Shown: in pieces, positions 233 through 36,993 of the stretch
Layout: the number at the start of each line of letters is the position of its first letter
Position numbering within the stretch: the stretch's first letter is position 1
Assembly (NCBI GenBank): GCA_047495785.1
Contig: JBLDXI010000033.1
Span: forward strand, 930,001 to 994,000
Source: Lepidodermella squamata
Lineage: Eukaryota > Animalia > Gastrotricha
Length of the DNA stretch: 64,000 nucleotides
Reading direction: 5' to 3'
Translations under genes and position numbers: made by a program
The notes under the pieces: generated by a model
The model's database searches: none
The model's input: only the letters and a program-made list of their open reading frames with translations
What the model was told of the DNA's origin: nothing

Positions 233-1075
233 ATGCACGAGAGGGGCAATTTCACGGACTTGAAGAAAATTGTTGCATCATGCAGGCGAGCATCAGCGGC
301 CCTAATTTCGTCAACTTCCCCTCTTTTAAGCCGACCAAACGGAAAGTCGAGAAAGCATCCGCATGAGAACCACTTTCACACCTGCGAGGTGCAGATCCTG
401 CGATCAACCTTTGATCACGTGAAGCAAATGGAGACTTTCCCTTGGGAGGTTCAAGACAGGTATGAATAAAAATATAGTAGTCCACTTTAAAATCAAAACA
501 TCCCTTATTTTGACAGCTTAGCAACTTCAAATCATGCCGAGATCGTTGCCAAGTGTTACAGATTTCAGAGTCGGCTCGTCGAGCTGCAAATGGATGCGGA
601 AAATATGAATTTAGCAACTATTATGATCAGCGTCCTCGAGCGATGCTTGGCTAAAATTCACAACCCAGCTAGCCTTGATGATGAAATCAATCAGATAATC
701 ACCCTTCATCGAGTTCTGGGCATTCATCCCAGGCTGACAGCTGCTATTCTCGAGGAAATCAAGCCTGTTGTATCGGCGCATCTAATATATGGCCACCTGT
801 GTATAGTTAAGGAGGAGAGTGAGCGTCGCCGGTCGTCCTACGCCGGAAAATATGTAGCACGCCAGCCTGTGGGCAGAACCAACTCGAACAACCACGCGAA
901 AGATATATTCAGCAAGATATTGCATTTTCGTCATCAAGAGAAGCCATCAAGTTGTCCGAACCTTCGCCAAGAATGTCTTACTTGCCGCACGTGGGATCGA
1001 TTCTTTGAATGCCTTATCAAGCGCTTCATAAAACCAACGGCGGAATGCAAAGGCAATAAGCCGCTCCTCTTTTAA
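233..1075 (+). CDS. Divergent globin-like protein G1 (2 exons: 233-459, 517-1075)
   Basis: Phase-2 GT-AG intron 460-516 joins an A/B-helix exon (EVQILRSTFDHVK..WEVQDS) to NLATIMISVLERCL-IHNP-IITLH(F8)RVLGI..CLTCRTWDRFF; homologous to eight other genes in the window. Confidence 0.75.
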
Positions 1076-1456
1076 AATGACTGAAAACGCACTCGTACTA
1101 CGTCATTTAGGCTACGATTCTTTCACCTCTCATTTTTTTCATTGAAATTCTATTCGTAAAAAGTAGCAATGCTCTATGAGCTATACATGGACCGTTGTAG
1201 CACTATAGATGAACCAATAAATCACATTGATTTAACGATTGAAGGATTTTAGTAGCCGGCGGGTCTCGCATTAAATTTGCATCGGATTCGCTCAGTTTCT
1301 ATCAGACACCTTAGAATAATAAAGAAGGTCGCATCTATTGGTTACAAGCCCGTTGATCGATTACGCCAGCCTCGCTGTGTTTTTTTCGCCTATTACAAAG
1401 AAACTTGCAGAAGGTGAAAAAACGAGCTGCACTTCGCCTGGCCTAGCAAATAGAAC

Positions 1457-2553
1457 ATGGCTTCCCGCGCCGAGTCCGAGGGCGGAGTAAGTGTCGCTGC
1501 GTCAGGTAAACCCCACAGTGAAGCTCCTTCGAACGTCAGTTCATTGCCTTCGATTGTCAAATCAATACACGGCCCTGGGGTCCGTTATTACTATCTAAGT
1601 GGTCAAAAGAAATACGACGATCGATTTTGGGATACCAAAGCAAATCTCGATCTTTACAACTGGCAGTTTCACAGAAATCGAGTTAAGCTTCGTAAGTTTA
1701 CTTTTAGAGTGATGTCCAGCTTAACACCATTTGTTTTCAGAGGGTAGTCACGTAGATGCAGATCTTCCAGCAGAATTTGTTAGGCAAGTTGAAATATTGG
1801 CTGATAGGGCGAAGCGAAAGAAGGCATTCGAGGAGAAGGAGATCGAAGAGAAAAATAAACTGCTTGCCGTATACAAACAGGGAGTCTCTCCTGATCCTTA
1901 CGCTTACAAATTGGAGCCGATTGTAGAGGCTAGGAGATCCTTCTAGTAAGGATTAATTTCGTCGGATGCATCTCTTACCTCTTTTGTTTTTCGTTCCCAT
2001 AGTAAAGAGAATTCAGAAGTCTTAAGGCAGCGGAGATCTGTGGAGCTCAGTGAAGAGAATAAGGTAATAGCTGGAAAGAATAAGAAAGCTATTCGATCGA
2101 TTCAATTTGACAAAGCGGAATCTTTTTATCAGGTAAAGCAAGCTTAAGTTCCTGAATTGCTTATTCCTTATTTTTCTGCATGTTGTGATTTTCAAGCACC
2201 ATCTGAAGCAAATGTATAAACTAACGCGATTCCCGGCTATCCAAAGCCAGCTGATAAAGGGTCAGATCTGCTTGCTTGATTTAACGCTGAGGAACCAGGC
2301 TAACTGGAGATCTCATGTTGCAGGTGAATCGACTACTCCCCGCGACAGCAAGGCGCCATCACAACTGGCGACGGACCGGTCATCTAAAGTCGAGAAACTT
2401 CCACGTGACATCGTCAATAAACATCCAGTTCTTGGTCATGGAGGACACCCTGAGAAGGACAGTGGCAAACGAAAGACTCTGGTTTCAGCAGACCCTCGGC
2501 ACACTCCGCCGGCGTCGCCCGAAGATGGAGATATCAGAAACGCGGCTTTTTAA
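1457..2553 (+). CDS. Hypothetical multi-exon protein, unknown function
   Basis: Frames join through short GT-AG introns (1692-1740, 1945-2002, 2133-2196, 2261-2323); AATAAA near 2634; no recognisable domain. Confidence 0.6.
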
Positions 2554-2679
2554 CAAAAACCCCGTGCAATAGTAGAAAACCGAGTGCATTTCCCGGTGAT
2601 CAAAAGTTACTTTGTTAGTATCTCGACAAGAAAAATAAATAGTTATGGAGAGATAATTCTTGTTTTATTGAAATACCAG

Positions 2680-3763
2680 CTACATTAAGCAGATTCTTGT
2701 TAAAAAGGGCAAATCCGAAGGCTTTGGCGGCTCGACAGAATTAGGACCCACTGGTTTTGTAAATTTATGCACTAGTAATGTCCTTAATGCTAAAACAGCG
2801 AAGGCCGCCAGGATGATACTCGCACCAACGATGCTGTAAGGATGCGGTATGACGCCTACAACAATTATCTCCCAAAAATACTGAAAAATCAACTCAGAGA
2901 TTGGATCGAGAGCTAAAAATGCGGGAGGGAGACTTTTTGACGCAAGCATATCCAGCGCAATTCTTCCACTGCCTAAGAGGCCTATGACTATGGTGGCTAC
3001 TCGAATATGCGTCTCGCATGGTGGGAGTCGAATGTCCCATACCAAGAAGAGAATCGTCGCGATCCAACCGCTAACAAAACCGTGAATCGTAGAGACGCTA
3101 GCTATTGGGATTTCCTTTAAGCACGCGTAAGTTGAATACATAATTGATCCTAGGAGTATTGAGCCGAACGCCAAGATGCATCCAACAACATCAGGCGGAT
3201 CCGAGTTGCTGAAAATGAAGTCTGGGCGGACAATGAATGCGGCTCCTTAAAATGAAAAAATAAAAAACCTCCTTAACGAAATGTAATTTCTAACCTGCAA
3301 CACAAGCGAAAAACAGTGGGAAATCAGTGAGACGCGGTCGTTGCCGCAAGAATGGCCAACTTATCATCATGGTTAAAAAAGGACCCATCGCTGTGATTGT
3401 TGCAAAATCTGGTAAGCGGATCCTTTGAATTGCATACAACGCAAGTCCGACCTTTCCTATTGCACTCATGCAACGCAATGTCAGAAATGTCCATACTCTT
3501 TTGTTGTAGCGTCCGAATTCGATGATAGGTTCGCTTTTATAGACAGCAATCGGCACTGCGGTGAAAAAAACCGTCCATTGCCGGATCATGAGAACAAACG
3601 CCCCAGGCAACGGGTCGGCGGCTTCTGATGAGGTCACTTTTTGGACGAAGACGTTATAGACAGCGCCGGAAAGGCCGGCAGAGATCACGCAGATGAAGCC
3701 GAACCACCATCGTAGGATGACGGAATTTTCCGGTATAACGTACCGTTTCCGGCGAAGAGTCAT
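2680..3763 (-). CDS. EamA/DMT family (SLC35G-like) membrane transporter; 5' end may extend further
   Basis: Two hydrophobic exons with EamA-type motifs (LTLRC..G, ATITAMGPFLT..SWPFL, FIVRPDFIFS, P.PYSIVGASII). Confidence 0.8.
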
Positions 3764-4462
3764 AATTTGAAAATCATCATCTGAAAACGAAAAAAGTGGA
3801 GTGGCCCCATATCGCTGCGAAGTTCATTATGCAGACATCTCACTGCCGGTCAGTACCCATGGGAGAAATTCTTATCGGGAATTTCTCGCAAATTTACAGC
3901 CCGGCATTGCGATAACAAAACGTACTCGTATTAAACAATGTCTTTGCGTACTTTTATTCAGATGACAACGGTAACAAAAAAGTTATAGTATTTAAAATTG
4001 CCAAAAACAGTCAAGTTTTTCTTGAGCTTTTTTACAGGTTAATTATCTCGATTTTTTCATACAGCTTTCTGAGCTACAAAATAAACTAAAACAAGGCATA
4101 CTGCGGTACCCGTCTGATTGGGGTTTTAATTTAACTAAATATGAGAATAATACTATCAGCTACTCACGAAACGATTTTTGCACATTTTGTTCCATGTCAT
4201 GGCCCTTCCATCAGGATAAAATAGCGAGAAAAATATGACGGGTCGGAACAAATATAGGTAAAATTAACTTATTATGCAAAAAATAAAAATAACAAAATTC
4301 AATGCGAATATCTGTTAATCGATGCGGAAACAACTAAATTGCCGTCATTTGATATTTACAGCGTAATTTTTCTAGCTATATTATGTACTCTGTTTTCGAA
4401 TATCGCAGATGCTATGTATGACAAGGAGGAAGGATCATATTTTAGGTAAACATGAAGTCTGC

Positions 4463-16750: not shown

Positions 16751-17323
16751 ATGCAGTCCTATCCATCAGCGACCAAGCTGAACGATGACGTCAATGTGTT
16801 CACGCAAATCGAAATAACCATGCTGAGGAATTCATTCAACGGCTTGAAGCCCAGGCATGAAGAGGTCGCACAGTTACTCCTTCAGAAGTAATTCAAATTT
16901 GTTCACTGATTTTTTAATTTACTTCATTTTTTCAGAATTTCAAATGTAAAAGGCGCGTTGGACTCATTCCGCCGAGCTACGAAAGGCGGCGAAGTCGCAA
17001 ACAGCTGGACTACAACCCATTTAGGAATGATAGTCATGGGCGGGATCGAACGCTGTCTGCTCCGAATCGATAATCCCAACAGTTTAAAAATGCTCATTGC
17101 CCGACTGACGAAGAGCCATACGGAGCGATTTCGAATCGACCCGATCATGATGGCGCGAGTGCTAGCCGCCTGCCAGCCTGCCATCCAGGCCGAAGTCAGT
17201 AAAAATTACGCTGTAAACAAGGCCAACTCAGACCCGGGGAGTCAGTTCGACCGCGCATCTGTCTGCGCTGCTTGGTCAAAGTTTTTCCGAGTTGTTTGTA
17301 ATTTATTTATGACAACTAAATAA
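16751..17323 (+). CDS. Divergent globin-like protein G2 (exons 16751-16887, 16936-17323)
   Basis: MQSY..FTQIEITMLRNSF..LLLQK | ISNVKGALDSF(CD1)..HLGMIVMGGIERCLLRIDNP..KSH(F8)TERF..AAWSKFF; phase-2 intron at B12. Confidence 0.85.
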
Positions 17324-17591: not shown

Positions 17592-18152
17592 ATGAAGTTT
17601 GAAAAGCTGCTCAGTGTGTCATGTAGAATTTGTCGACAAAAAGGCTTCCAGCACTTGACCGAGCTGAAAAGCGATGCCGACTGCTTGTATGCTCAAGTTT
17701 GCGGCTGCGTCGGCAAGGACGCTTACGTTCACTACGACTGCTTCAACAAGGTGATTCGGCGGCGAATTTCCTGCTTGGATACTTTCAACGACAACACGAT
17801 TATTTGTTGCGATAAATGCCGGAAACCGTTTCAATGCAGATATTTGCACAATTGGCGGCTTCGTTTCTTGTACGATCCATGCAGGTGGTTTTACATTTCA
17901 CTCATCGTCGGAAATTTACTGCTGATACCGACAGCGATTATCTGCTTCACTGAAACTGTTCAAAACATGATTTGCGGGGAGTTCAGAGATGATGCCAATA
18001 TCAAGTCATGCTGGCCATTCCCGTTCGGCATCGGTTGCATTCTGGTTTTGGGATTCCTTTGGGTCATCTTCTCGATTCTAGTTTCTCGCCGGCCTGTTTT
18101 TGTATTCTTACAGCCACCTGTTCAACGGGTCTCAACTGCTGATGTTAAATAA
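17592..18152 (+). CDS. RING-CH (RINGv/MARCH-like) membrane E3 ubiquitin ligase, intronless
   Basis: CRIC..C-G-C..YVHYDC..CDKC (C4HC3) followed by two hydrophobic segments. Confidence 0.75.
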   Translation: MKFEKLLSVSCRICRQKGFQHLTELKSDADCLYAQVCGCVGKDAYVHYDCFNKVIRRRISCLDTFNDNTIICCDKCRKPFQCRYLHNWRLRFLYDPCRWFYISLIVGNLLLIPTAIICFTETVQNMICGEFRDDANIKSCWPFPFGIGCILVLGFLWVIFSILVSRRPVFVFLQPPVQRVSTADVK

Positions 18153-20980: not shown

Positions 20981-21694
20981 ATGGGCAACGAAAAATCTAC
21001 GCTGAAGCATAGTATTACTCAGCCCAGTTTCACATATAACCCGCGAAAGGTTCGGCTGCGGGCTTTCAGCACTGAATCTGCTTCTCAAAGCTCGACGGAA
21101 CTTACTGGAGAAGTTCAAATCGGGCCTAAAGAATATCCATTCAGTGCAGGAGAAATCTTGACTCTGAGAGCCACATTTGAGAGACTTACCAAAAAACGCG
21201 ACTTGATTGCTATGGAAATTTTGGACAAGTACGTTAAAACTCGCTTATTGGTTTTTCATCATTTTTACTCTGTAATTTATAGAATTTCGAAAAATTCACA
21301 AATATCAGAGAAGTATAGGAAAGCGAATTATCGATTGGGTTGTTCAAGCACGGTTTTGAACTTGGGGTCCATTCTGGTATCGGGAATCGAGCGTCTCATA
21401 CTTCGCCTCGCGAATCCCGTCAAACTCGAAGCAACGATCGCCGAATTGCTGAAAAGCCATGAACAGCTTAAAATATCGCCAAAGCTCATGGTTACCGCGT
21501 TGAAGGAGGCGAGACCTATTATTTTAACGAATATCCTGCAGTGTCATAGTTGCCGCGGGGCGGCTGCATTGGAGCATGAACAAGTGCCTCGAAGCGTCAC
21601 AGGATGCCTTTTACCGACAGATTGCGGTACCTGTCAATGTTGGAACAAATTTTTCGACTACATTTGTTATTCAATTTCGACCATAATTTATTGA
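20981..21694 (+). CDS. Divergent globin-like protein G3 (in-frame 54-nt intron 21229-21282)
   Basis: MGNEKS start; FSAGEILTLRATF..EILDK | ISK; NLGSILVSGIERLILRLANP; KSH(F8)EQLKI; CHSC..CGTCQCWNKFF. Confidence 0.8.
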   Translation: MGNEKSTLKHSITQPSFTYNPRKVRLRAFSTESASQSSTELTGEVQIGPKEYPFSAGEILTLRATFERLTKKRDLIAMEILDKYVKTRLLVFHHFYSVIYRISKNSQISEKYRKANYRLGCSSTVLNLGSILVSGIERLILRLANPVKLEATIAELLKSHEQLKISPKLMVTALKEARPIILTNILQCHSCRGAAALEHEQVPRSVTGCLLPTDCGTCQCWNKFFDYICYSISTIIY

Positions 21695-22566: not shown

Positions 22567-23366
22567 TTAAGTAGTAAAAATAAAAATAGCATGATTTACA
22601 ACAGTTTTCCAGAGATGACAAGTATGGCAAACTTCAGATTTCGCTCCGGAGCACTGATCGCCGAAAGTTCTCGTTTCTGAGCTGCAGCTACTTGAAACCG
22701 GGCTGAGTTTTAGCTTCTGAAGAGACCATTCGGTTTTCAGGCTAGTTAGTTGTTTCGCATAGCACTCGTGATGAAGCTTGAAATACCGCATCAAAACGGG
22801 TCTAAAGGCCTTTAATGCCGGCGGGATGTTTTCCTTAGGGAGGCTTATGGATGCACGTCTTTTCCTCAAGTTTCGAATAGATCTCGCGAAAGAATCAGGA
22901 TTTGTTGATAGTTGTAAGCAGGATTCGATGGCATCGAAAAGAAGAGATGTCAGGTGAAGAATATCCCAATCCTCCGTATCCTTCGCCCTACGTGAAGCGG
23001 CAGTTGCCTCGAGTCCTTTTTTCTGGTCGTACCTGGCTCAGCCGATTTGCAAAAAATTAAACTATTTAATATATTAAACCGAAACCTTTCAAGAAGATCC
23101 GTTGCGATTTTATCTCGATCGGGTCTCATATTTTGATAGATTATTCGAACATCCAGTAGCTCCTGCTCTGAGATACCGAGGGCGCCTGAGGAGAGGTCGG
23201 CATCACCATGAAGACTTAATTGGTAGTCGTCGCGAAAGCTGCCAAAGGCCTGCAAATGGGTTAGCTCCTCCGAAAAATACGAAGGCATGTGCAGTAAAGA
23301 CTGAGCTAATGCTCGTTTGATGTGCGGGCTTTTCTGCTTTCGAGAATTAGACGATGCTGCACCCAT
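22567..23366 (-). CDS. Globin-like protein G4 lacking the proximal His (exons 23366-23086, 23032-22567)
   Basis: MGAASS start; ISEQELLDVRIIY..DLLER | YDQKKG..WDILHLTSLLFDAIESCL..NPDSF..RNLRKRRASISL..HHEC..CHTCHLW; phase-2 intron 23033-23085. Confidence 0.7.
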
Positions 23367-24265: not shown

Positions 24266-24933
24266 GAGCAGTTGGCACACTCGCACAGACATTTTCAAAC
24301 TTTTGTAAGTTACATCAGTACAAGTTAGCGGCGCTGCATACCAGAATAACTTCATGTGAAGTACAGAATTGGCTTCATGTGACTTACCTGGCCTAATAAA
24401 GAGCGCTATTAGCTTGTTTGTGTCCAAGGTGACAAGTGACAAGTATTAAATGTGGTTCGCATGTTTCTACAATAAGCAAAAACAGTGGAAATTGGAAATT
24501 ATGATTTTTAATTGTCGCACCTGTCACCCACTTATACTGACGTAAACAAGCTAAAGTCCGATTATTTATCGACTCCGCTATCTGGGGATGAGTTCTTCTG
24601 TTGCTGTTTTTATGTATAAATGCCTAAAGATAGCCGCCCACCTTAAAGAGTTGTCGCATTTGCAATATTGCAATTTGCAATAACAAGTTCTGTTGTTAAG
24701 GAGGAATCTTCGTTATCTCTCTCATTGTTCCTGCCACTCAAGGTTCAGAGATCAGAGATCCATACATGCCTAAGCAACGATATCCATTAATAACTTCAGC
24801 TTCCTCAACAGTTTCGATCTTAGAGCTTTAGCTGAACGTCTCAGTAAAGGAAATATCACGTTTTAATTTAAAACTCCCAACATCAATTAAATGCGGAATC
24901 AATCCACTGAGTGTCATGTTTCATAGATGATTA

Positions 24934-26788
24934 TTAACCTGAGAATTTAAGAAGAGGCGGGCAGGCCATTTTCTTGTTAACCACGTCCATAACACAGTTA
25001 TAGCACAAGTTGAAAGTGCTGACTGGCTTGAAGTAAGTGTTGTTCTTCATGACAAAAGTCGAGTTGCTACTGTCGTACTTCGGAGCATAAGAGTCGATGT
25101 CCGCTTTATAGATGATGCCAAAAGCGACTGTTGCGACGAAAACACACAAGATGTACATCGCAAGGCCGATATTGTTTGCCATCTGCAGCTTTTCTTCGCT
25201 TCTCTTGGCGCGGCCTCTCGCCGCCATTTCAACCAAGGTACTCTGTCTCGACAGCGGTTCACTGATTTTCAGTTGATCATCCGGTACAACCTTCGTCTTT
25301 TTAGACCTTTTCAGAATCTTATATAGGTAAATTGTCGATAAAATGAGATAATAGGCGTTTTAAATAGAACTCACTGCCTCTGCAAAGAACTTTTTAACCC
25401 AGTAGAAGAACCGAACTGATTCATCTTTCTCAGCGTAGTCGACCAATTTTAGCAAAATTGATGCGTAGATCTATAACCAAAATAACTTATCGTCACTAAT
25501 CACTAACAGATTTTACATTAATGAGATACTTACAGAAGCAGCGATTGAGATGGCAAAAAGAGCTAAGAGAAGCTTAAACACATAAAATGCTAGGCATTAC
25601 GATCATCTTCAAAGTTGGATACTTACCCAGTATAAGGCTGGCATGGATTCCACATCGGCATTGGGCGGTAATGTGTTTACCACGTTACAGAAAATGACTG
25701 TGAGGGAGGCAAAAATAAACAAAAATTGATTGAAATTGAACATTTACCAAAGAACGATAGAGAAATGGTGAAGGAGATCTGCATTTTTTCATCACTTCCT
25801 GCTTCAACCAAGAAAATGCAGACGCCAGCAATGGCCAGTAGAATGATGGGCAGCATGATGCTGAGGAAGTAGAACTGAGGCTTTCGCACTATAACATACT
25901 CAATAATATATTCCTGAACCCCAAATCCGTAGCTCTTCAGATAGTTTCTGCTGCCTAGCAAGTCCCATTGCGGGTTAGACACGTAAAACTGTTAAGGCGG
26001 ATTTAAAAGTAATGTTTACGTTCCAGAGATAACCTGCCTGATCGCAAATCGGGAATTGAAGGTCAGTATTGAACAGAACAATGTTGTAGTCCGTCATGAG
26101 GATGAAATTGCTGAATGTTAGACATGATAAGTGAAAGTACGATTGGATCACATGAAACATACATAGCGCAGATTTGGGTATCATATGGGTATGAATAAAC
26201 GCGGAAAGTACTGCAGAAATATCAAAGATTTTATCTTTTGCAATACAATTTACGAACAATTACCAAGAGAGCCGATACTTGTTGAATAACCGCCACCAAG
26301 CCAACGATGGCGACATTATATCAACAGGGGACTTATCAATAGCGTTCCTCCAAGCTGCATAAGTTTTACTTCTATCATGTCCACAACATTTCATATGACT
26401 TACCATCAACATTCAGAACATTCCTGATAGCAATTTTCGGTGTCCACATCTTAGACGACCCGCCAGATTCGCCAATAGTGAATACAAACCCAGTCTTGTC
26501 AGGAACATTAGGCCCAGACGAAGAAACGTCCCACATGAATTCGATAAGAGCAGATAGGGATATTTCATTTTTCGCCTCGTTAACACTTTCGATGGCGATT
26601 ATGACAGGGTGGACTGCTATGCTGACAGTTTTACTCTGAAGCAAATTTATGGGTGGTATATTTGGATGGCGCAGAGTCTGAGCCTGAATTGACGCCGTAT
26701 CGTTATTGATAAAAACTGCGTACGGGTTATTGACAGCCGCCGACACGCTCGCAAATAGCGTTGCAAGTATTAAGCAAGCGTAAACCAT
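24934..26788 (-). CDS. Divergent Cys-loop ligand-gated channel subunit L1 (cation-type M2), multi-exon
   Basis: WTPKI (loop A region), spliced Cys-loop CTFRVYSYPYDTQIC, RKPQFY-M1, SDEKMQISFTISLSF M2, M4 followed by a Cys-rich tail. Confidence 0.88.
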
Positions 26789-27015
26789 CGTTTACAAAAC
26801 GAGAATTAAAAAAATTGTTTTAGGATGATTTATTTCTAGCCTACGCGGCCATACTGAAAAAACATCGATTCCCGAGAGATATATGGCTCGCCATTCATTT
26901 TCCGCTGAATCAAAAATTAGCCATTAAGCCTGGCCTTACTTTTGTAGTCATTTTATTTTTGAAATTGTAATGGTGCATTCGGATGAAAAGTTCTGTGTTC
27001 AATATAGCAGGCTAG

Positions 27016-28772
27016 TTATTTGCCAATACGACATGGCATGTCTTCATCTACGATTAGTCGATTCGAAGTTGCATTAAGACTGCATCCCATGCACTGGCTG
27101 ATATCGTTGACTGGTGGAAAGTAGGTTTTACCATTCAGGGAAAGAAGGCCTTTCAGATCTCCAGTAAGGTCACGCGGCACAATGTTGCCGAAACAGTCCA
27201 AAATCGAGGTGAAGAAAACAATTGACGAGATAAAGAACGTCAGACAGTAAATGACTAGTCCGATGACATTGGCATGGTATAGGCAGCAAGGCGTAATGGT
27301 AAACTTCGGGTTCGAACTGTTTTTTGAATGTTTATCAGGCTTAGCTTTCTGAAATCCAACTCAAAAACTCAGAGGATTCACTAGCTTTAAATTATTGCTT
27401 ACCAAATGATACGGGCTGGATTCAGGAATTGGTCCGTCGTAAAGAGATGGTACATTTAGATTTTGCGTGAAAAGGTTCGGGATAGCAGGCAGGGCAACAT
27501 CATTTCGTTGCAAGAATGTTTTAACCCGCTGCTCCATTTCATACTGCTTGATGCTAAATGAAAATCGGCCCAAGATCGCCGATGCAATAGCAGAAATCAG
27601 TGATAGCGTGAACAGGCTCAAGATATACTTGAAAAGACACATATGTCAGAAATGAATCGAGAAATTTCAGCAGATTAATTTACGTAGTAAAGAAGAGGAA
27701 AGAAGTCTGCATTTGACGGTAAATTTGTGACCAAGTTCGAGAAGACAAAGAAAAAATTTAGCAGTACAGTGAATGAAACACCCATTTTCTCTTCAGATGC
27801 TGGCGGTAAAATGAAAATTATTGCTCCGGAAACCCCGAGAAGGATTGTCGGAATGACTACGCTAAAGCAAAAATGATCACAGAATTGGTATTTAGTATTA
27901 GGAAGGGGAAAAATTTGAACCCAAACCTGACAATATAAAACAGGGGTTTCCGCTTCAGAACGAATTCAAGCCGCATTATTTTGACCGTATTGAATAGCTG
28001 AATGGAATGCTGGCGACTTGCGATCAACTCCCATTGTGAGTTGGGAAGATATAAAGCTGTGCACACAGGATCGATCACACTGCGAAACAAGCTTCATATA
28101 GTCAAATTGTTGGCAATATCAGCGAAATTCTTACTCCTTTACAAATCCCACGTATTCCGACTCAGCTGTAAGAGAGATGTTCATGTCACAGACCTGATAG
28201 TCCCACGGAAATGACGTCAGTTTTAGCGAGCATTTAAGTAAGAATGGCATGTAAAAGCGCCATTTTACGTTTCCGAGGAAATCTAACTCCAAGGGTGAGT
28301 AAGACGAAACATCGCGGAAGTCGTTCAGATTCAGCAGGTTTAGAATTGTAAGCTTCGGGGTCCAGGCTGATGCCTGGCCGTTGCTAATGCCCATTGTTGG
28401 CGCTAGGCAAACGCCAAGTTCGTCGTTAACCCACGTGAAGCCATCTCGCGCTAGGTTGTACTGAAGTTCGAGGGCTCCGTTGATCAGCACAGTATTACTT
28501 GCCTCCTCGACATTCTGCACAGAGGCTATGTAGAAGTACGGCTGAAGGTCGATTATCTTCATCCCGCTAGAAACAGGTGGGATATTTGGGTCACTATTAG
28601 CAGTTTGCTCGAGCCTTTGTTTAATAACGGCTTGGTAATTAAACACTCCATCGAATTTAGATGCAATATCTCGCGCCAAGGTTGCGTTATTTTGCAGGTT
28701 CTTGCAATCATAAGACAAGCAAAGAATGTCAGCATGAAGACCAGCTAACACAAGGACGTAAAGGATTTTCAT
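27016..28772 (-). CDS. Divergent Cys-loop ligand-gated channel subunit L2 (cation-type M2), multi-exon
   Basis: WTPKL, Cys-loop CSLKLTSFPWDYQVC, KRKPLFY-M1, PPASEEKMGVSFTVLLNF M2, Cys-rich tail. Confidence 0.9.
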
Positions 28773-29060
28773 AGTTTTTCAGATTTTACGCCATCATGCC
28801 AGAAGCAAACCAAGCCAAGCCCTCACAAAGGCACTCAAGGGCCTTTGAGATTCGGTTAAGTGCATCATTCAGTGGGGAGCGCGAAAAAACATGGAATGTT
28901 TAAAAATGCATAGGATTCGAATTTCCAAATGTTCAAACTTTGCAGGAAGCAATAAATCAAACGTCCCTCGGAAGTTTTGCAACGTGAACTTTCGGCGCCT
29001 TTAACCTGAGAAAAGAATTTCTGTCCCAATTTCGACCTACTATGTGATAATTTTGCTGTT

Positions 29061-29677
29061 TTATTCACGACATGCTTTGGAGACGACAATCAAGAACTTT
29101 TCCCAAATCTGGGCATTGTTTTGAGAGTGGCGTTTGAAAATCGGAATAATGTGAAGGACAAGAAGAGACATTGCAGCGCCATTCAGGCCGAAACGTTGCA
29201 GGTGGGTTAAGCAGAACTGTTTTACACCTTCTCGCAAACCTGCAACATTCCCGGATCGTTGCACGCATTTTTCAACTCCTGTTAAAATGATGTTTCCGAA
29301 ATTGAGAAAATTCGGACCAATACTTGATATAACAAGTTGGGCTCTCGCTTTTGCGTAGAATGAAGCAATAGCTGGAATTGAGTTGATCCTATAAGTAAGA
29401 AAAATTAAATAGGATCCTGGAACTTCAAGGTGATTTCTCACTTTTCCGCTATTTCAGCAGCAATTATACCACGGTGAGATTTCATGTTTTCGAAACTTGA
29501 TCGAAGTTGTTGTTGCTCTTGAGCAGAGAATAGTTGGTTACCAGCGGTTTGTTCGGAAGATGCTCTGCATATCACAGCCGCTATCCGAACGGATTGAATC
29601 AAGTGCTTCGTTGCCAAGCCGTGGCTTTCATCACCAAGCTTAGAACTTTTCTCTAAATGCCCACAAGCGGATCCCAT
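29061..29677 (-). CDS. Divergent globin-like protein G5 (exons 29677-29442, 29388-29061)
   Basis: First ATG gives MGSACG; FSAQEQQQLRSSF..EIAEK | INSIPAIASFY; NFGNIILTGVEKCV; LTH(F8)LQRFGL; IWEKFL. Confidence 0.8.
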
Positions 29678-30259
29678 TTCAAATTCCCCAACTGAATGAA
29701 CTGAGCTAGCTCGCCGATGAAAGTCAATTTGAGTCACTTAAGCTCGATTATTATTGAGCTGTGTCTCAAATTTCAGCAAAGTACGGAAAGCACGCGATCG
29801 GAAATACATACCCATAAACTACAGCCAAAGCTAATACTTGTGAAGGGCGAAGCTTCCGTGATTTTTAACATCAAGCCCACGTAAAGAAAATGCTTATGGC
29901 ATGTCCGCACTCCTGCGTGCATTATTGGTATTAAAATTTGAAAAATGATACCTCCAACAAATGATAAGACAACTCTCGAACTAATTAGAGTCACACGAGC
30001 AAGATTAGTGCGTATATTGTCTGATAACAGTCAAATTGCGGTTGTAAATAACAATTCATAGGCATTTCCGGTAAAAATACGTGGGAAGTCAAATTTTTAC
30101 ACGTCGTAGCTATTCATCATATCAAAATAGTGATGTATTAGCCTTCTTTCATTCCTAAGCAACAAGTTGATTCGAAAAATATTTTTTTAAGATTAGCCGA
30201 ATTAGCAATCAGTCCATATGCTGATGAATCACGCCTTGTTGTTTTCTGCGCAGTATTTC

Positions 30260-30939
30260 TCAAGCTAAAATAAGGCGTTTGCTATTTGCCGAGAATATTC
30301 TTATAACGATATCAAAAAATTTGCTCCAAGCGGCCTGAACGTCCTGCACGGGGTACAAGCTACGCTCACTCTGTCGAATAGCTTGCTGAATGATGACTGG
30401 TTGAGACGCTCGAAGAGCATCGACCATCATAAAAGTGGGGACGTCGTAGAATTGAACGTGTCGCTCTCGCATGCCTTCAATTGCGCGAGCAAGAGATTGC
30501 AGATTGTCGACCCTGAGCAGGCAACGCTCGATTCCGCCGAGAAGTATCGTGCCCAAGATGGCTCCAGCCCACGCATCGCCCATCACTGAGTAACGAACCG
30601 CGTAATTCCTGTACTTCTCCCGCGCTCCTATCACCGAAGCTACGCTATTTTAACATCAAGAATAGAATCAAGGCGCTCAAGAATAGCCTTATCATACCTG
30701 ATGTGTATCTCGAGACAATCTTCGCTAGTATTTCGCTGCTTGATGCAATTGAAAGTGCCGCGTAAAATCGCGAGTTCCTCACTGGAGAACAGTACTTCAG
30801 GCTCAGTTTGGGTTGTTTCGTCAATTGATAGCCTATGACCTCCCGAACCCGAACCTTCCTGCTGTTGGTGGTAGACAGGGCAGCCACCCTCTGCGTTGTA
30901 AAGAAGACTTTTGCTTCGTGTAAGACCGTAAGATTGCAT
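30260..30939 (-). CDS. Divergent globin-like protein G6 (exons 30939-30698, 30644-30260)
   Basis: FSSEELAILRGTF..EIHIS | VASVIGAREKY; ILGTILLGGIERCLLRVDN; ERH(F8)VQFYDV; AAWSKFF. Confidence 0.85.
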
Positions 30940-31124
30940 CCTTCCTACTATAAATTCGGTGCCAAAAATGAGCTGGCTTTTAGTTTCGCAGAATTTATTC
31001 AGCTGTTAAATATACCGCCGGGGATTATTAAATTTAGTTAAAATTATGTAGCAAATGTGACCATATAATAAAAATACGGGTATAATTTAATTCACACCGG
31101 ATGATTTTAATAATAGTTTTTTCC

Positions 31125-31893
31125 TCAACCAGTTGATGGGCTGACAATTAGACCGCAGACAACTCGGAAAAACTTTGGCCAAGACCGGCAAATTTCGCAT
31201 GTCTCTTCGGGATTCTCCTGGTTTTCGTCGTGAGTATGGCACTGGAGCAGAGCTTCTATAATGCTTGGCTCACAGACTCGCAGAGCTCCAGCCATCATTA
31301 TTGGATGCACTTGATAAAAAGAAAATGTTGTATATAATATAACATAATAATAATATATTAAACATACCGTTATACTGCTCGCGGTGAGTTATCTTTAAGC
31401 GCCTAATCATCGCACGTAAACTTTTTGGGTTGTCAATTCGCAAAAGGCAACGTTCGATACCGCTCATCAATATTATTCCGAGATTTACAGCTGACCATGA
31501 GTTTCCGATATCATGCAGCGCACTTTCGTAACTTTGAACAGCCCCCTCGACAGTGGAAACCCGCTGTAGAAGTTGGAGAGCAGTCTCGTATGGGCACTTC
31601 TTGATGTGTTCAAACGTTTTCCGCAACGTCTCGACTTCTTCGGCTGTGAAATCGTCGTCAACATCTTCGAAGTTGACCGTCACTGCGTCATTTGATGTGT
31701 ACGACAGCGATTTGGCCACACTAGTACGCCCTGATCCAGAAATCATCGGACATAAGTCATTGCGCTTTCGCGGATCTTTCTCGTGGATGAAGGCTGAATG
31801 CTGATTTTTGCTGATGGGGCAGGCACTTTTCGAAACTGGCAACCGGGTTTCATTGACGTGGTTTGGCTTTGCTTTAGCGATATTAGCGCCCAT
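31125..31893 (-). CDS. Divergent globin-like protein G7 (exons 31893-31368, 31309-31125)
   Basis: MGANIA start; FTAEEVETLRKTF; NLGIILMSGIERCLLRIDNP; ITH(F8)REQYN | VHP; CHTH..CEICRSWPKFF. Confidence 0.85.
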
Positions 31894-33482
31894 TTCCAGT
31901 AAGTGAATGACCTCGTACGAAAAATGATAAAATTATATAATATGTAGCCTAGACATTAAGGACAACAGAAGACAGATTTTCGGATTATGAAAAGGGCACT
32001 TCATCCTATTTCCTACCGTGGACATGGAATTTCTGAACTGTAATGAGAATCTAGCGCTTTGGCAAATGTTTCGAATCCTTACAAACGCCAAAGAGGATCA
32101 TGTGATTTATCGAGAGGGCACTCAATGGCAACTGTCAGCTGCTGATGAATAAAAAGACATAAGTTGGCGAAACTTAATTAGGAATTACTAGCCGACCACA
32201 CTTGGTTAGTGCGCAATTAACCAATCATGCATGCTATATTGGGTAGCGTTTAGCGTTCAGCAAAGCGGCTTGTTGCAGCCATAAACCGGTGTTCTCCTAT
32301 TACAAAGGACTCTACACTGAATCGATGTTGAAAGCAGTTTTTCCAAATTAGGTGGTTTGACTGTTGATATGTCAGCTTATTAGGTGTACAGAAGTTTAAA
32401 ATTAAATGACTCTGGCTGTCATAGCTTTCACCATTGCTCTGCACTGGCCCTAATCTAATGCTTAAATTACAAGACTTGTTAGATATAAACTAGCTATGAT
32501 AAGCATGTCACATCGTTAACCTTGCGTTAGATGCAGTGATCCAAGAACAGCTTGAACTGATAACAGGGACCTACCCCGAAGATCATAAGAGAAACATTTT
32601 CGAGACGGCAGGTTGGTTTCCAGAGTGGCGTGCTGCAGGGTTCGACTCTGCTCGTCATTTTGCACACCCCAGCGCTCCTGGCGGTGAGTTTGATGCATAT
32701 GACGATGATTTGTGTTGGGCAGCAGTCCGCTCAGGGGCTACTTACCCAGAGGACGACATAGGCCCGCTCAGGCGGAAGTGTATCACGTGGCTGCTTGGAC
32801 CGGTTACTAAAGGGAGCAATTTAACGCTCCCGTCATTGCGAGGCTCGAACTCGGCGGCGCTGTGGCCCCTGGCCCCGCAAGTGTCAGTCCTTAGAATTAG
32901 GTTCGATGAGATGTTGCTTTGAAGTCCCACATCGATCACGTGCTTAATTGCTGTGGGCAAAAGTTGGTTCATGGTTCAACTCCGGCGGCCAGGGCTGTCT
33001 TTCCCATGGAGCCGTACCTCATATGCCTGGAACTCGTTCGTTCCGGCGACACCTTTGGCTCGTGCGCTTTGCGTCTGCTACGAAGACCCAGCTCCGCCGC
33101 CTTGACGTGCTCCGAAATAGCTGGCACCAGACATTACCAAAATTTTCAATGTAAATCCCGCGGCAATTTATCTTTCAGTTTTTGAGAATTGGGTGAAAAC
33201 TGCGGTGATTTTTCAGGTGCCGCCTTTACTCGAGTGCGGCCCTTATCTTTCACCAAGTTGCGATTTTATTAGGCAACATGGCATTTTCCCCCAAGATTAG
33301 CTCGCAGGCGTACGCATTAAGCAGGGACTGCATGTTATTCAGTCACTTTCCGACCAACCTAAATTGAATTTAATCTGCTAGCTGCTAGCATCTGTTGGCA
33401 TAGGTACTTGCAGAAGGTGTCAAGAGTCTAACAAGGGTTGCAGAGGCGACGAAAAAATGTTGAGGATTAATCACTTCAGTGT

Positions 33483-33631
33483 GCGAAGTAGGATCCGGGA
33501 GCTGAGGTGTTTTCTAGTTGTTTTCTGGGACCCAGCCGAAGAAACCAAAGGGTCCCCTCTGGTTTTTTAGCCGTCACCTGGGAGGAGTCCCGGAGCTGGG
33601 GTGTCGCGCGTTGCGCACCCCTGTACTTCGC
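33483..33631. ncRNA. Candidate structured RNA or element of unknown class
   Basis: Nested complementary segments GCGAAGTA/TACTTCGC, CCGGGA/TCCCGG, AGGTG/CACCT, GGGACCC/GGGTCCC and GGGGTG/CACCCC in a GC-rich island. Confidence 0.35.
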
Positions 33632-34522
33632 TTGAGATGTGCGGTGATTGAACGAGTGCAGCCTATATTAACGTACAAAGCTAGGAACAAGGGTGATTTT
33701 GCAGCGATTCTTCAGGTGCGGCCTTAATACTGAAAATTACAGTATGCTGAAATTCGACTTCAAGCAGTATGTGCGGTGTAACTGAACAGTCCAACAATTT
33801 AGGTTAAAGTTGTTCACCTGTCTTTTCGTCAATCTCGAACTCGAGGAGCCCATTGTTGTGCGATCAAGGAAAATCCGCTCAAAATGTCAGACTTTTTTCT
33901 AAAAAAACATTTGAAGAGGCGAATCTAAAAATGCCGACGACTCTTACAATCATCTTCAGCTCGTTTATTCGCTCGAATAACGGGGGCGATGCAACTTTCA
34001 TTTTTGATCAAAAAATACCCCCATTTCTATAGGAAGACTTTAAAACTGCTGTTTACCGACTTTTCGAGTAAAATGACATGCTGGGGACGACGAAACGCGT
34101 TGCCGGCAAGCTACTCCCAAGATTCGATTTTAACGAGAATTTCAGAAAAGTTTACCGCTAACTATAGCTATAGCATGGAGAAAACATAACTTTGAGAAAT
34201 TCCTCTCATCTTTAAGGAGTAATTGAAATATTGCGAGGACAAAATATTGTCCATCGTCCGTTAAAGAAGCGAACAAAGAAAAACTGGTCCGAGGCTACCG
34301 GCGGGGAAAGAACTAAGACCGCTGCTGGGAGCTTCGTAACTACAAAATCTGCTCTGGTTTCAACTCTGCTCTGGACCTGAGAGCCGTGATTGTTCCCAAG
34401 TGGCTGAAAATGTCTTTGTAAATAAAGAAGGGGGAGAAATAACATCAGCGTAGAAACAAGTGTATTTATTTTAGAATTTAAAGACAACGATAAACAATGT
34501 AAATTTTGAAGATAATCTGCCT

Positions 34523-35591
34523 TCAAGAAGAAGTCGTATGTAACAGATTAACTGTCTGCCTGAAAAATTTTAGCCACGCGTTCTGAACCTGATCGGAGGT
34601 GTAAGCGCACCGCGGCGTTGATGCACATGCCTTGACGATTTGATGGATGAATACATGCTGCGTGGCGCGTAGTGCCTGAGCCATCATGCGGGCGGACACA
34701 TTCATGTGTGAGTGATTATCGCGCTGCAAATGCACGGCGGCTTGATACTTCTTCAAATTATCGATCCGCAGCAGGATTCGCTCGATGCCAACACATACCG
34801 TTTGACCAAGGTTCTTGGAAGACCACCCGCTGCTGTTTGAGTGAATTTTGCAACGTTCTTCAAAGCGATCTTTCGCACCAGGCACAGTAATTACACTAGA
34901 GGACATACATAAAAATAAAAATAAAGCAATCCACCTTAAAAATTCATTACCAATTGTGGATGATTGTTTCTAAATCACTTCGCTGGAGTTTCAAAGTTGC
35001 GAAGGTGCTTCGAAGTAATGCCACCTCCTCTGACGTGAACTCTTCTATCGGAACCTCGGGATCATCGTCCAAATGCTGCTGGATAATGATGCAAGGTATT
35101 TTGAAATTGCAACTGTGACTACAATGCGCTCCATTGCTATGCGATCTGTGAGCATGAGACTTGCAAGCCGCATTGAGGTGAGACCGTTCTGAGTCATTAG
35201 AAGCCGGAGCGCTGTTGTTGTTGCAGAGGTACGGATGATGGCTGCTATGGGTGATGCATGGCGACAGGCTGTGGCACGCATTGCCGCATTTAGGATCATT
35301 ATCAGAACCATTCAGCATTTCGTCAGATGCAGCAAGTCTATTAAAATGGCTGAAGCTGTTGCGGTGATGATATAACAGAAGGCTAGAGTCTGGCAAGTCT
35401 AGATTGTTATCGACAGCGAACAAGCTCGTTGTATTAGCTAGATCGAACAGATCGAGTTTAGGTTTTTTGAATTGATTGCTCAGATCGGTGATAGAATTGC
35501 GCCACTCGCTAATGCTGTTTTTACCCTGCGTGTACAACTCGCGTACTGGCGAGCGCAGACTGTGCGCCTTCTCGGCGATAAAATCGAACAT
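34523..35591 (-). CDS. Divergent globin-like protein G8 with a long His/Cys-rich N-terminal extension (exons 35591-34951, 34895-34523)
   Basis: FTSEEVALLRSTF..TIIHNC | VITVP(C2)GAKDRF(CD1); NLGQTVCVGIERILLRIDN; DNH(F8)SHMNV; NAWLKFF. Confidence 0.85.
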
Positions 35592-36262
35592 CTTCAGACG
35601 CCGTAGACAGGGCGCGAAAATTCCTTAAATTATCTATTTGTGAGAGAAATAAAACACAGTAAAAAATTATCGACCTTTCCCATCGCCGTTGTATTAGCAG
35701 TATTAAAGCGACTCTTAAGAAACGCCTACTTACAAAGCGTGTGAAATCGTTAGTACAAATTCCCTTGCGAGAAGCCCTTATATGTTACCGAGAAGCAGTC
35801 ATGCAGTTGACAACTCGAGCTGATAGTCCCAGCATCAGGTTTGTCATATTCGATTAGTATGAGTTCGTATTTACTCTACGTTAGTTTTTCCCGTAAAATC
35901 TCCAGTTGTTGCACCAAGATAAACCCGAAAAATCTTGGTCAAAATGAGGGTCAAAAGATCAGACGGACGGATAATGACAAGTTTTCAGAGGAAAAAACGG
36001 GGACTCGGAAGAGATATTATCATGTTACTTCACCGTCATAAACAGAGCTTGAAAATTGATTATCTGCGATCGAAGATTTAAGACTGCGGGGCTTATGCCT
36101 CTGTTGATAGATTACTCTCATTCTAATTAATCGAAAAAATGCAAATTTCCTGATGCATTAGCGATGATCAAAGTCGGCGATAAAAGCCTAGCTTATCATG
36201 CTGATTAAAAATACTGAAAATGTGCGAGTGAGGCGGTTTTATTCAAGACCATTTTAGACATA

Positions 36263-36993
36263 TCAGTCAATAACAGTGAAATGGCGGCAGACGACGGTAA
36301 AGAACTTGGTCCACACGAAGCAGATTTCACAATGCGAATCGCCGTGGGAACGATGTGATCGCTTGAGTTCGGTCATGAAAGGCTTCTCCGCCTGTCGCAG
36401 CGCTTGCGTCATCAAGTCACCGGAAACCTGATATGACTCACGATGGCCGGATTTCAGTTTTGATATGAGCGTTCGTAGAGATTCCGGGCTGTCGATACGA
36501 AGCAGGCACCGCTCAATGCCGCTCATTAGGATCATGCCGAGGTTCATAGCAGACCAGGAATTTCCTATGTCATGGCGGTTCCGCTCGTATGTATCAGTAG
36601 CCCCTTTAATCTCCGAGATCCTGAAATATGCTAATTACAAAAAAATCAAATGACGTCATTAACTCACGTCTTCAGCATCTCTAAAGCGACCTCATCGCGA
36701 TTTTTCTTGACCTCTTCGAAAGAATCTCGTAAAATGCGTACTTCCTCTTCGGTGAAACGGTCGTCGTAAGATGACGTGCATGTTCCGTTCGTCAATGTTG
36801 ACTCTTCGCTTTTGCGTTGCGCGTTTGCGTCATCTTCTTGAAAGTTATGTGAGGTAATTTTAGGTGGCGAAGCGCGAGCTAATTGAGATCGTCTTAAAAT
36901 TGTCGCCACTCCAGCGCTGAAAGAACGCTTGATGCCAGACTGGCTCCTGCTTGAAGTGACTGACTCGTTCTGTTTTGTTTCCGAGGCTCCCAT
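36263..36993 (-). CDS. Divergent globin-like protein G9 (exons 36993-36668, 36620-36263)
   Basis: MGASET start; FTEEEVRILRDSF..EMLKT | ISEIKGATDTY; NLGMILMSGIERCLLRIDSP; SGH(F8)RESYQV; SHRSH..HCEICFVWTKFF. Confidence 0.85.

What the first reader, a model, noticed from the sequence alone, without database searches (positions are those of the whole stretch)
233..36993. Hidden family of nine highly divergent globins in 37 kb
Seen: nine two-exon genes (G1-G9), which the ORF track splits, share an F-[ST]-x-x-E-x-x-x-L-R-x-x-F-like A helix, [NH]-L-G-x-x-x-x-x-G-I-E-R-C-L-L-R-I-D-N-P (E/EF), a His in the F helix (8 of 9) and W-x-K-F-F (H helix). Eight have a phase-2 intron at the end of the B helix. 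Established: B12.2 is an ancestral globin intron position; Pro C2 / Phe CD1 spacing (G8 VPGAKDRF) and His F8 are globin hallmarks. Inference: a lineage-specific globin radiation with long variable N-termini, more like sensor or redox globins than O2 carriers.
Basis: partly seen in the sequence, partly recalled or inferred. Interest (0 to 1): 0.85.

Follow-up and report, generated by a model that had tools for sequence, protein, structure and literature searches.

The report
Nine hidden, divergent globin genes
Nine genes in 37 kb of an unidentified small animal's genome really do encode very divergent haemoglobin-type (globin) proteins that routine annotation would mostly miss; they are a new subfamily of a well-known protein kind, probably membrane-tethered signalling or redox globins rather than oxygen carriers.

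Summary
A profile of the family finds exactly nine loci in the window, E 1e-12 to 1e-52, with the next best piece at E 0.19. Eight genes have a 47-57 bp GT..AG phase-2 intron at one homologous codon. G7 lacks it and has a phase-1 intron between helices F and G.

cDNA contigs of a public run join the exons exactly as modelled in all four genes I could test (G5, G6, G7, G8). The DNA run keeps the introns.

The globin reading also holds:
- Pfam Globin is weak: only the G2 exon passes the cut-off.
- A family profile against PDB sequences lists only globins in its best 60 (best E 5.7e-7).
- The profile hits the snail, sea-urchin and nematode multidomain globins among 1.84 billion proteins.
- AlphaFold models match globins over the whole fold (Z 15.0-15.4, 137-141 residues). 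In a search of 48,161 chains the first 43 rows are all globins.

Alignments place the shared intron at B12.2. His F8 is kept in 8 of 9 genes and Phe/Tyr CD1 in at least 7. Distal E7 is Leu or Phe, not His.

Five genes start with a myristoylation-type Met-Gly. The paralogues are old: orthologues and gene order recur in a metagenomic relative.

The scan has noted similar globin clusters elsewhere in this genome. Haem binding and function are untested.

The parts
233..459 (+). G1 exon 1 (N-terminal extension, A and B helices). The start may lie upstream or outside the window.
   Evidence: ORF and GT donor after base 459; aligned in A2
517..1075 (+). G1 exon 2 (C to H helices, long G-H insert, H-x-C...CxxC-W)
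   Evidence: Acceptor AG before 517, intron 57 bp, phase 2; HMM E 2e-45
16751..16887 (+). G2 exon 1 (short N-terminus MQSY.., A and B helices)
16936..17323 (+). G2 exon 2. The only piece above Pfam's Globin gathering score.
   Evidence: PF00042 23.3 bits against cut-off 22; intron 48 bp, phase 2
20981..21228 (+). G3 exon 1 (MGNEKS start)
21283..21694 (+). G3 exon 2. The 54-bp intron is in frame, so 20981-21694 is one ORF, and that ORF was the one folded.
   Evidence: AF2 pLDDT 74.8; VIA Z 15.0 to cytoglobin 6q6p_B
23086..23366 (-). G4 exon 1 (MGAASS start followed by a polybasic stretch)
22567..23032 (-). G4 exon 2. The most degenerate member: Arg in place of His F8, no aromatic residue at CD1, long branch in the tree.
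   Evidence: A1; HMM E 8e-41; tree branch 2.43
29442..29677 (-). G5 exon 1 (MGSACG start)
   Evidence: cDNA joint
29061..29388 (-). G5 exon 2 (Phe at E7, no G-H insert)
   Evidence: cDNA contig skips 53 bp, 29388-29442, CT..AC on the + strand
30698..30939 (-). G6 exon 1 (MQSY.. start)
   Evidence: cDNA joint 30644->30698
30260..30644 (-). G6 exon 2
31368..31893 (-). G7 exon A (MGANIA start; helices A to F in one exon, no B12.2 intron)
   Evidence: the loose end of the cDNA contig equals the end of exon A
31125..31309 (-). G7 exon B (G and H helices, H-T-H...CxxC-W). The 58-bp phase-1 intron lies at about FG5.1.
34951..35591 (-). G8 exon 1 (extension of about 185 residues rich in His, Cys, Ser and Asn, then the A and B helices)
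   Evidence: an 862-nt cDNA contig crosses the junction and runs on upstream
34523..34895 (-). G8 exon 2 (VPGAKDRF: Pro C2 and Phe CD1)
   Evidence: cDNA joint 34895->34951; 35% identical to orthologue P0009
36668..36993 (-). G9 exon 1 (MGASET start)
36263..36620 (-). G9 exon 2
   Evidence: Intron 47 bp, phase 2; HMM E 3e-45

Best explanation
The nine genes encode real but very divergent globins with the 3-on-3, myoglobin-type fold. Each has a variable, disordered N-terminal extension and, in several members, an insert between helices G and H.

Shown here:
- They form one family and are homologous to canonical animal globins.
- The ancestral B12.2 intron is retained in eight genes.
- The ancestral G7.0 intron is absent from all nine.
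- Four of four tested genes are transcribed and correctly spliced.
- The paralogues are old and are shared, in conserved order, with a second (metagenomic) animal.

Inferred from conserved residues: eight of the nine bind haem through His F8, packed against Phe/Tyr CD1. With Leu or Phe at E7 and mostly Leu at B10, the distal pocket is apolar and lacks a distal His. The iron is therefore more likely five-coordinate than bis-histidyl.

Inferred from the Met-Gly-x-x-x-[STAG] starts of G3, G4, G5, G7 and G9, and of many relatives: these members are N-myristoylated and sit on membranes, as globin X and C. elegans GLB-12 and GLB-26 do.

Most likely role: a diversified set of low-abundance, cell-type-specific membrane or cytoplasmic globins acting in gas or redox sensing and signalling, or in handling reactive oxygen species or NO, rather than bulk O2 transport. 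G4, which has lost His F8, may no longer bind haem.
For: Family and count.

Sequence homology to globins:
- Pfam Globin scores 23.3 bits for G2 (cut-off 22), 15.8 for G3 and 15.4 for G5.
- The exon-2 profile against PDB sequences gives fish haemoglobin beta first, E 1.5e-4.
- The full-length profile A3 against PDB sequences gives 200 sequences at E<=1. The best 60 are all globins, best E 5.7e-7, with alignments running from helix A to helix H.
- An exhaustive HMMER search of 1.84 billion proteins gives 32 hits. The named ones are the Biomphalaria and Bulinus multidomain haemoglobins, a Gnathostoma globin-domain protein and a sea-urchin multidomain protein.
- A3 aligns to 12 domains of the Biomphalaria globin.

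Fold:
- AF2 of the G3 ORF: pLDDT 74.8. Foldseek's top 50 are all globins.
- VIA gives Z 15.0, rmsd 2.4 A over 137 residues to cytoglobin.
- AF2 of the intron-free relative P0002: pLDDT 78.7. Against 48,161 chains the first 43 rows are globins; best is Lucina HbIII, Z 15.4 over 141 of 152 residues.
- ESM Atlas gives globin clusters both by features and by shape.

Residue mapping to B12, C2, CD1, E7 and F8.

Expression and splicing.

Age and synteny: tree; locus L003.

Acylated membrane globins as precedent: PMC3176823, PMC4686822, PMC3520999, PMC7771090.
Against: - No haem-binding, spectral or localisation data exist.
- Most members fall below Pfam's threshold.
- Tyr rather than Phe at CD1 in five genes, and Leu at E7, are unusual.
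- Without model coordinates I could not check which side chains face the pocket.
- The E7 assignment rests on profile alignments. They agree across five target proteins, but a register shift of one residue would put N/H at the distal site.
- Myristoylation is predicted from a simple motif only. G1, G2, G6 and G8 lack it.
- An apolar five-coordinate pocket also fits a plain low-affinity O2 binder such as Glycera haemoglobin.
- Phylogenetic placement among globin X, X-like, neuroglobin and nematode globins was not done.
Confidence: 0.75

Rival explanations
1. Classical oxygen-storage or oxygen-delivery globins (myoglobin-like). They would be five-coordinate with an apolar distal pocket, and were multiplied for different tissues or oxygen regimes.
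For: Leu or Phe at E7, with His F8 and Phe/Tyr CD1, predicts an open sixth coordination site. Glycera haemoglobin is among the fold matches (1hbg_A, Z 13.1); its E7 Leu is from my own knowledge and was not checked here. Large globin families in invertebrates are known to include carriers (PMC7771090).
Against: Five of nine carry myristoylation-type starts. All have long disordered extensions of 17 to about 185 residues, features linked to membrane and signalling globins (PMC3176823, PMC4686822). There are no signal peptides. An apolar pocket without a hydrogen-bond donor stabilises bound O2 poorly.
Confidence: 0.15
2. Globin-fold proteins that no longer bind haem. They would be structural or regulatory domains, as in RsbR or phycobiliprotein-like relatives.
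For: Sequence divergence is extreme: most members fall below Pfam's cut-off. G4 has lost His F8 and the CD1 aromatic residue. RsbR and phycobiliproteins appear lower in the fold list, Z 9-10.
Against: His F8 is kept in 8 of 9 genes and in nearly all relatives. The CD1 aromatic residue, Leu F4, Val/Ile FG5 and the H-helix Trp are also conserved. Haem globins score 3-5 Z units above the haem-free folds.
Confidence: 0.08
3. Not globins at all: a chance resemblance of an unrelated helical family, or decaying pseudogenes.
For: Individual Pfam scores are marginal. Helical models often reach middling Z scores.
Against: Independent lines agree: profile to sequence, fold over the whole domain with only globins on top, a language-model search, and intron position and phase. 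All nine reading frames are intact. Four of four tested genes are spliced in cDNA. Orthologues are conserved in a second organism.
Confidence: 0.02

Closest known systems
Globin X and globin X-like (GbX/GbXL) membrane-bound globins of animals
   Same: Globin fold; N-terminal extension with a Met-Gly myristoylation-type start in 5 of 9 genes; B12.2 intron; presumed non-respiratory role (PMC3176823, PMC7457136, PMC7771090).
   Different: There is no G7.0 intron and no E10.2 intron. E7 is Leu or Phe instead of His or Gln. The sequences are too divergent for Pfam. Five genes have a Cys/His cluster at the G-H corner.
C. elegans globin family (33-34 genes, e.g. GLB-12, GLB-26, GLB-6)
   Same: A large family of very divergent globins with N- and C-terminal extensions, some myristoylated or palmitoylated and acting in redox signalling (PMC4686822, PMC3520999). 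The nearest ESM Atlas clusters by features are nematode globins, score 0.89-0.90. GLB-12 matches the fold at Z 12.2.
   Different: GLB-12 is bis-histidyl six-coordinate with a distal His (PMC4686822). Here E7 is Leu or Phe. No specific sequence affinity was seen: GLB-12 scored E 4.8.
Planorbid snail multidomain haemoglobin (Biomphalaria glabrata XP_055883606; Bulinus)
   Same: The best-scoring named proteins in the exhaustive search. The E to EF region (G-L-E-S-L-I-N-N-L-N-N-P against G-I-E-R-C-L-L-R-I-D-N-P) and the F helix align in all 12 domains.
   Different: The snail proteins are secreted chains of a dozen or more domains with Gln at E7. The window's proteins are single-domain and intracellular, with extensions.
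Cytoglobin, Spisula nerve haemoglobin and Lucina haemoglobins II and III (solved structures)
   Same: The best structural matches: Z 14-15.4, rmsd 2.4-3.3 A, 137-141 residues, the whole domain.
   Different: Sequence identity is only 10-15%. Their distal residues differ (His or Gln at E7, Tyr at B10 in Lucina).

Membership tests
Globin superfamily (3-on-3, myoglobin-like; Pfam PF00042) | Eight-helix 3-on-3 alpha-helical sandwich | tested here: met
   AF2 models of the G3 ORF and of relative P0002. VIA Z 15.0 (137 residues, rmsd 2.4) and Z 15.4 (141 residues). Only globins lead both the Foldseek list and the exhaustive VIA list.
Globin superfamily (3-on-3, myoglobin-like; Pfam PF00042) | Proximal His at F8 | tested here: met
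   The conserved His aligns with F8 of haemoglobin beta, haemoglobin mu and cytoglobin. Present in 8 of 9 genes; G4 has Arg.
Globin superfamily (3-on-3, myoglobin-like; Pfam PF00042) | Phe at CD1, six residues after Pro C2 | tested here: inconclusive
   Phe in G2 and G8 (G8 VPGAKDRF has the exact spacing). Tyr in G3, G5, G6, G7 and G9. G1 is ambiguous (CYRF). G4 has none.
Globin superfamily (3-on-3, myoglobin-like; Pfam PF00042) | Score above Pfam's gathering threshold | tested here: inconclusive
   Exon by exon, only G2 passes (23.3 against 22). G3 scores 15.8 and G5 15.4; six others have no hit. Spliced full-length proteins were not scanned, because the joined step was left out. Family profiles reach globins at E 5.7e-7.
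Globin superfamily (3-on-3, myoglobin-like; Pfam PF00042) | Binds haem b | not testable with these tools
   Needs recombinant protein and spectra.
Globin superfamily (3-on-3, myoglobin-like; Pfam PF00042) | Ancestral intron positions B12.2 and G7.0 | tested here: inconclusive
   A B12.2-type intron (phase 2, codon aligned to Arg B12 of haemoglobin mu and cytoglobin, within one residue) is present in 8 of 9 genes, three of them confirmed by cDNA. G7.0 is absent from all nine. G7 has a new phase-1 intron near FG5 (positions defined in PMC7457136).
Globin X / globin X-like clade | N-terminal myristoylation, with or without palmitoylation | tested here: inconclusive
   Met-Gly-x-x-x-[S/T/A/G] in G3, G4, G5, G7 and G9, with Cys5 in G5. 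Absent in G1, G2, G6 and G8. This is a motif only; no predictor or experiment was used.
Globin X / globin X-like clade | E10.2 intron (GbX) or the B12.2 plus G7.0 structure (GbXL) | tested here: not met
   No intron in the E helix and none at G7.0 in any of the nine.
Globin X / globin X-like clade | Groups with GbX or GbXL in a phylogeny | not tested

The most novel reading that the evidence does not exclude
This is an undescribed, ancient subfamily of membrane-tethered animal globins. It has an apolar distal pocket (Leu or Phe at E7) and, in about half of its members, a Cys/His metal or redox clasp tying the G-H insert. It has expanded to dozens of genes in a poorly sampled animal lineage and is invisible to standard domain annotation. 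If so, surveys that report animal lineages as globin-free or globin-poor (for example 'none' in Adineta, PMC7771090) may be missing such families.
Probability: 0.35. Interest if true: 0.6.

Novelty: new variant of a known kind. Interest (0 to 1): 0.45.

Why it matters
Globins are a model family for gene, intron and functional evolution. This family shows how far a globin can drift and still keep the fold, the proximal His and the roughly billion-year-old B12.2 intron. It has fallen below Pfam's threshold, lost the distal His and lost the G7.0 intron.

It also shows that genome surveys based on standard domain models can undercount globins in poorly sampled animal phyla.

The family gives testable material for the open question of what membrane-bound, non-respiratory globins do. 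Its natural variants come with and without the acylation signal, with and without the Cys/His cluster, and in one case (G4) without the proximal His.

It is not a new kind of system. Large families of divergent, acylated globins are known in nematodes, annelids and arthropods.

Tried and rejected
- The search for homologous proteins with the G7 ORF found nothing. With profile A3 it returned only one metagenomic protein. The word index does not reach this family; the exhaustive HMMER search did.
- Taxon identification failed. The neighbouring receptor tyrosine phosphatase has a 58%-identical metagenomic hit, but its best named hit (Pecten) is only 27% identical. The run names are coded. The organism stays unidentified; a rotifer or any well-sequenced phylum looks unlikely.
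- Pfam scans of the closest full-length relatives (P0002, P0003, P0004, P0006, P0013) gave no Globin hit. Only P0016 passed, at 30 bits.
- Rfam found nothing in the window.
- The idea that the conserved N/H of 'NLG' is the distal E7 residue was rejected. Five independent profile alignments put it at E6.
- The idea of a recent local tandem burst was rejected by the tree and by synteny in L003.
- A phylogeny against GbX, neuroglobin and nematode globins was not possible without tool-supplied reference sequences.
Full-length evidence comes from the naturally contiguous G3 ORF, which carries an 18-residue intron read-through, and from the intron-free relative P0002.
Full report
**What is in the sequence**

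The window is animal DNA of about 42% G+C, with very short introns. Its genes include a receptor tyrosine phosphatase with fibronectin-III repeats, cys-loop receptor-like genes and a class-C receptor-like gene.

Between 233 and 36993 lie nine related genes: G1, G2 and G3 on the + strand, G4 to G9 on the - strand. An HMM built from the aligned second exons (A1) was run against every stop-to-stop piece of all six frames. It finds exactly these nine loci (E 4.7e-52 to 1.6e-12), and the next best piece scores E 0.19. Chance does not explain the family, and there is no tenth copy in the window.

**Gene structure**

Read directly from the DNA, eight genes have a single GT..AG intron of 47-57 bp after the second base of one homologous codon, so the intron is phase 2. 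That codon is K, K, K, T, S, S, C or R in the different genes.
- G3's intron is 54 bp, in frame and stop-free, so G3 appears as one ORF.
- G7 has no intron there. Its exon A runs from the start codon to the end of the F helix, and a 58-bp phase-1 intron follows.

They are degenerate in G1, G4 and G5.

**Expression**

One public run (X1) covers only the exons of the 6-kb stretch that I was allowed to lay. Its contig ends carry the SMART cDNA primer, so it is cDNA. A second run (X2) covers everything and is genomic DNA.

The X1 contigs skip exactly 53, 53 and 55 bp at the modelled G5, G6 and G8 introns (CT..AC on the + strand, which is GT..AG on the gene strand). One contig runs from G7 exon B straight into the last 14 bases of exon A. 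None of these joints is in X2.

So four of four tested genes are transcribed and spliced as modelled. An 862-nt contig also shows that G8's long N-terminal extension belongs to the same transcript.

**Are they globins? Sequence evidence**

Exon by exon, Pfam's Globin model is marginal: G2 scores 23.3 bits against a cut-off of 22, G3 15.8, G5 15.4, and the rest nothing. "Hidden" is therefore a fair word.

Family profiles are clear.
- A1 against all PDB sequences puts a fish beta-globin first (E 1.5e-4), with many globins after it.
- The full-length profile A3 combines the window pieces with metagenomic relatives. It gives 200 PDB sequences at E<=1, and the best 60 are all globins (best E 5.7e-7). 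The alignments run from helix A to helix H.
- An exhaustive HMMER search of 1.84 billion representative proteins gives only 32 hits.
- The named hits are the multidomain haemoglobins of the snails Biomphalaria and Bulinus, a Gnathostoma globin-domain protein and a sea-urchin multidomain protein. The close relatives are all unnamed proteins from metagenome assemblies.
- A3 aligns to twelve successive domains of the Biomphalaria globin.
- A protein-language-model search gives nematode globin clusters as nearest neighbours, score 0.89-0.90.

**Are they globins? Fold evidence**

I folded the naturally contiguous G3 ORF, which contains an 18-residue read-through of its intron, using A3 as the alignment. 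The result was pLDDT 74.8 and pTM 0.66, with a disordered N-terminus and G-H loop.
- Foldseek's best 50 PDB matches are all globins.
- VIA-align gives Z 15.0, rmsd 2.4 A over 137 residues to a fish cytoglobin, covering the whole domain.

The intron-free relative P0002, which the tree places (93/79, not starred) as sister to G2 and which is 40% identical to it, gave pLDDT 78.7 and pTM 0.70. In a Foldseek-independent comparison with 48,161 PDB representatives, the first 43 rows are all globins. The best is Lucina HbIII, Z 15.4 over 141 of 152 residues. The haem-free globin-like folds (RsbR, phycobiliproteins) follow only at Z 9-10. The ESM Atlas shape search also returns only globin-fold clusters.

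**Residue and intron mapping**

In the HMMER alignments to haemoglobin mu, cytoglobin and fish beta-globin:
- The split codon aligns with Arg B12. Phase 2 then makes the intron the ancestral B12.2, as defined in PMC7457136. The family lacks one residue around B12-B14, so the assignment is good to within one residue.
- Pro, where present (G5, G8), aligns with C2.
- The aromatic residue six positions later aligns with Phe CD1. It is Phe in G2 and G8, and Tyr in G3, G5, G6, G7 and G9.
- The conserved His aligns with F8. It is kept in 8 of 9 genes; G4 has Arg.
- The Trp of W-x-K-F-F aligns with the H-helix Trp or Tyr.

In five independent alignments, the residue just before the conserved Gly (E8) aligns with the distal residue. 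The targets were beta-globin, haemoglobin mu and cytoglobin, which have His there, and hagfish haemoglobin and Biomphalaria, which have Gln. E7 is therefore Leu in eight genes and Phe in G5. The conserved Asn or His is E6. The more canonical metagenomic relatives (P0016, P0023, P0024, P0031) have Gln in the E7 column.

B10 is mostly Leu. The G7.0 intron is absent from all nine genes, and G7's own intron lies at about FG5.1.

**N-termini**

G3, G4, G5, G7 and G9 start Met-Gly with a small residue at position 6: MGNEKS, MGAASS, MGSACG, MGANIA and MGASET. Many relatives start the same way. This is the N-myristoylation pattern known from globin X and from C. elegans GLB-12 and GLB-26 (PMC3176823, PMC4686822, PMC3520999).

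G2 and G6 start MQSY. G8 has an extension of about 185 residues rich in His and Cys. G1's true start may lie outside the window.

**Age of the family**

A maximum-likelihood tree of the C-to-H region was built with G7 represented by its C-to-F part only and three Biomphalaria domains as outgroup. It does not unite the nine genes:
- G8 pairs with P0009 (99/95).
- G6 joins that pair (96/92).
- G2 pairs with P0002 (93/79).
- G7 and G9 group with P0003 (92-94).

On the metagenomic contig L003, the G8 orthologue is followed on the same strand by the intron-free P0003-type gene and at least two more family members. That orthologue has a His-rich N-terminus and a gap of about 57 bp at the same place as G8's intron. 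The order matches G8 followed by G7 in the window.

The array is therefore old and shared by at least two animals that are only 35-58% identical in protein sequence. The organism could not be named.

**Mechanism**

Shown: homology to globins, the fold, intact reading frames, expression and conservation.

Inferred:
- Haem binding through His F8.
- An apolar, probably five-coordinate distal site.
- Membrane tethering of five members.
- A signalling, redox or ROS/NO-handling role rather than bulk O2 transport.

A plain O2-storage role (about 0.15) and a haem-free role (about 0.08; likely for G4 alone) remain open.

**Comparison and novelty**

Large families of divergent, often acylated globins are known: 33-34 genes in C. 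elegans, 32 in Capitella, and globin X or X-like across animals (PMC7771090, PMC7457136, PMC4686822).

This family differs in several ways. It lies below Pfam's threshold, has Leu or Phe at E7 and frequently Tyr at CD1, and lacks the G7.0 and E10.2 introns. In five of the nine genes (G1, G3, G4, G7, G9) there is an H-x-[C/H] motif at the end of helix G plus C-x-x-C just before the H-helix Trp. That motif is the subject of a separate finding.

I class it as a new variant of a known kind.

Notes from this scan record several other clusters of similar globins elsewhere in the same genome. I did not test those. They agree with the picture of a genome-wide expansion.

Every search used exon references, the contiguous G3 ORF, or proteins returned by the tools.

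Noticed in passing
window 33477-33608: A short element of about 130 bp, between G7 and G8, has about 100-fold excess depth in the genomic run X2 (about 11,000 against about 100 in the flanks), with many divergent loose ends. It is single-copy in the window and has no Rfam match. It is probably a very high-copy short repeat of MITE or SINE type.
   Followed up: partly
G1 728-1040, G3 21560-21650, G4 22600-22760, G7 31150-31250, G9 36290-36400 (approximate): Five of the nine globins, and many metagenomic relatives, carry H-x-[C/H] at the end of helix G and C-x-x-C immediately before the H-helix Trp. The two motifs flank a variable G-H insert, which looks like a metal or redox clasp. G2, G5, G6 and G8 lack it. 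This is the subject of another finding of the scan.
   Followed up: partly
window 34953-35591 (-): G8's N-terminal extension of about 185 residues, upstream of the A helix, is rich in His, Cys, Ser and Asn. Its orthologue on L003 (9644-9934) also has a His-rich N-terminus (HFHHYHHRF...). It may be a metal-binding tail.
   Followed up: no
L003:9644-15322 (ENA metagenome contig, relative organism): A tandem array of at least four family members on one strand. The G8 orthologue keeps the short intron at the same place. The next gene (P0003 type, G7/G9 clade) has no introns. A cys-loop receptor-like gene lies just upstream, as cys-loop receptor-like genes also lie close to the globins in the window.
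   Followed up: partly
window 24934-28772 (-) and 41419-63455: Arrays of cys-loop ligand-gated-channel-like genes: Neur_chan_LBD hit at 28131-28772, and repeated ...CPF.V.CRLYLIRIQ... and ...SYYAE. exons from 41 to 64 kb. This is a second expanded family next to the globins.
   Followed up: no
window 17592-18152 (+): An ORF of 186 residues with a Cys/His pattern resembling a RING-CH (MARCH-type) finger, followed by hydrophobic segments. It has no Pfam hit at E<=0.001. It lies just downstream of G2.
   Followed up: no
window 31006 and 34461: cDNA contigs of run X1 end here with the SMART IIA primer sequence. The positions lie 119 and 62 bp downstream of the G7 and G8 stop codons, and probably mark the 3' ends of those transcripts.
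   Followed up: no
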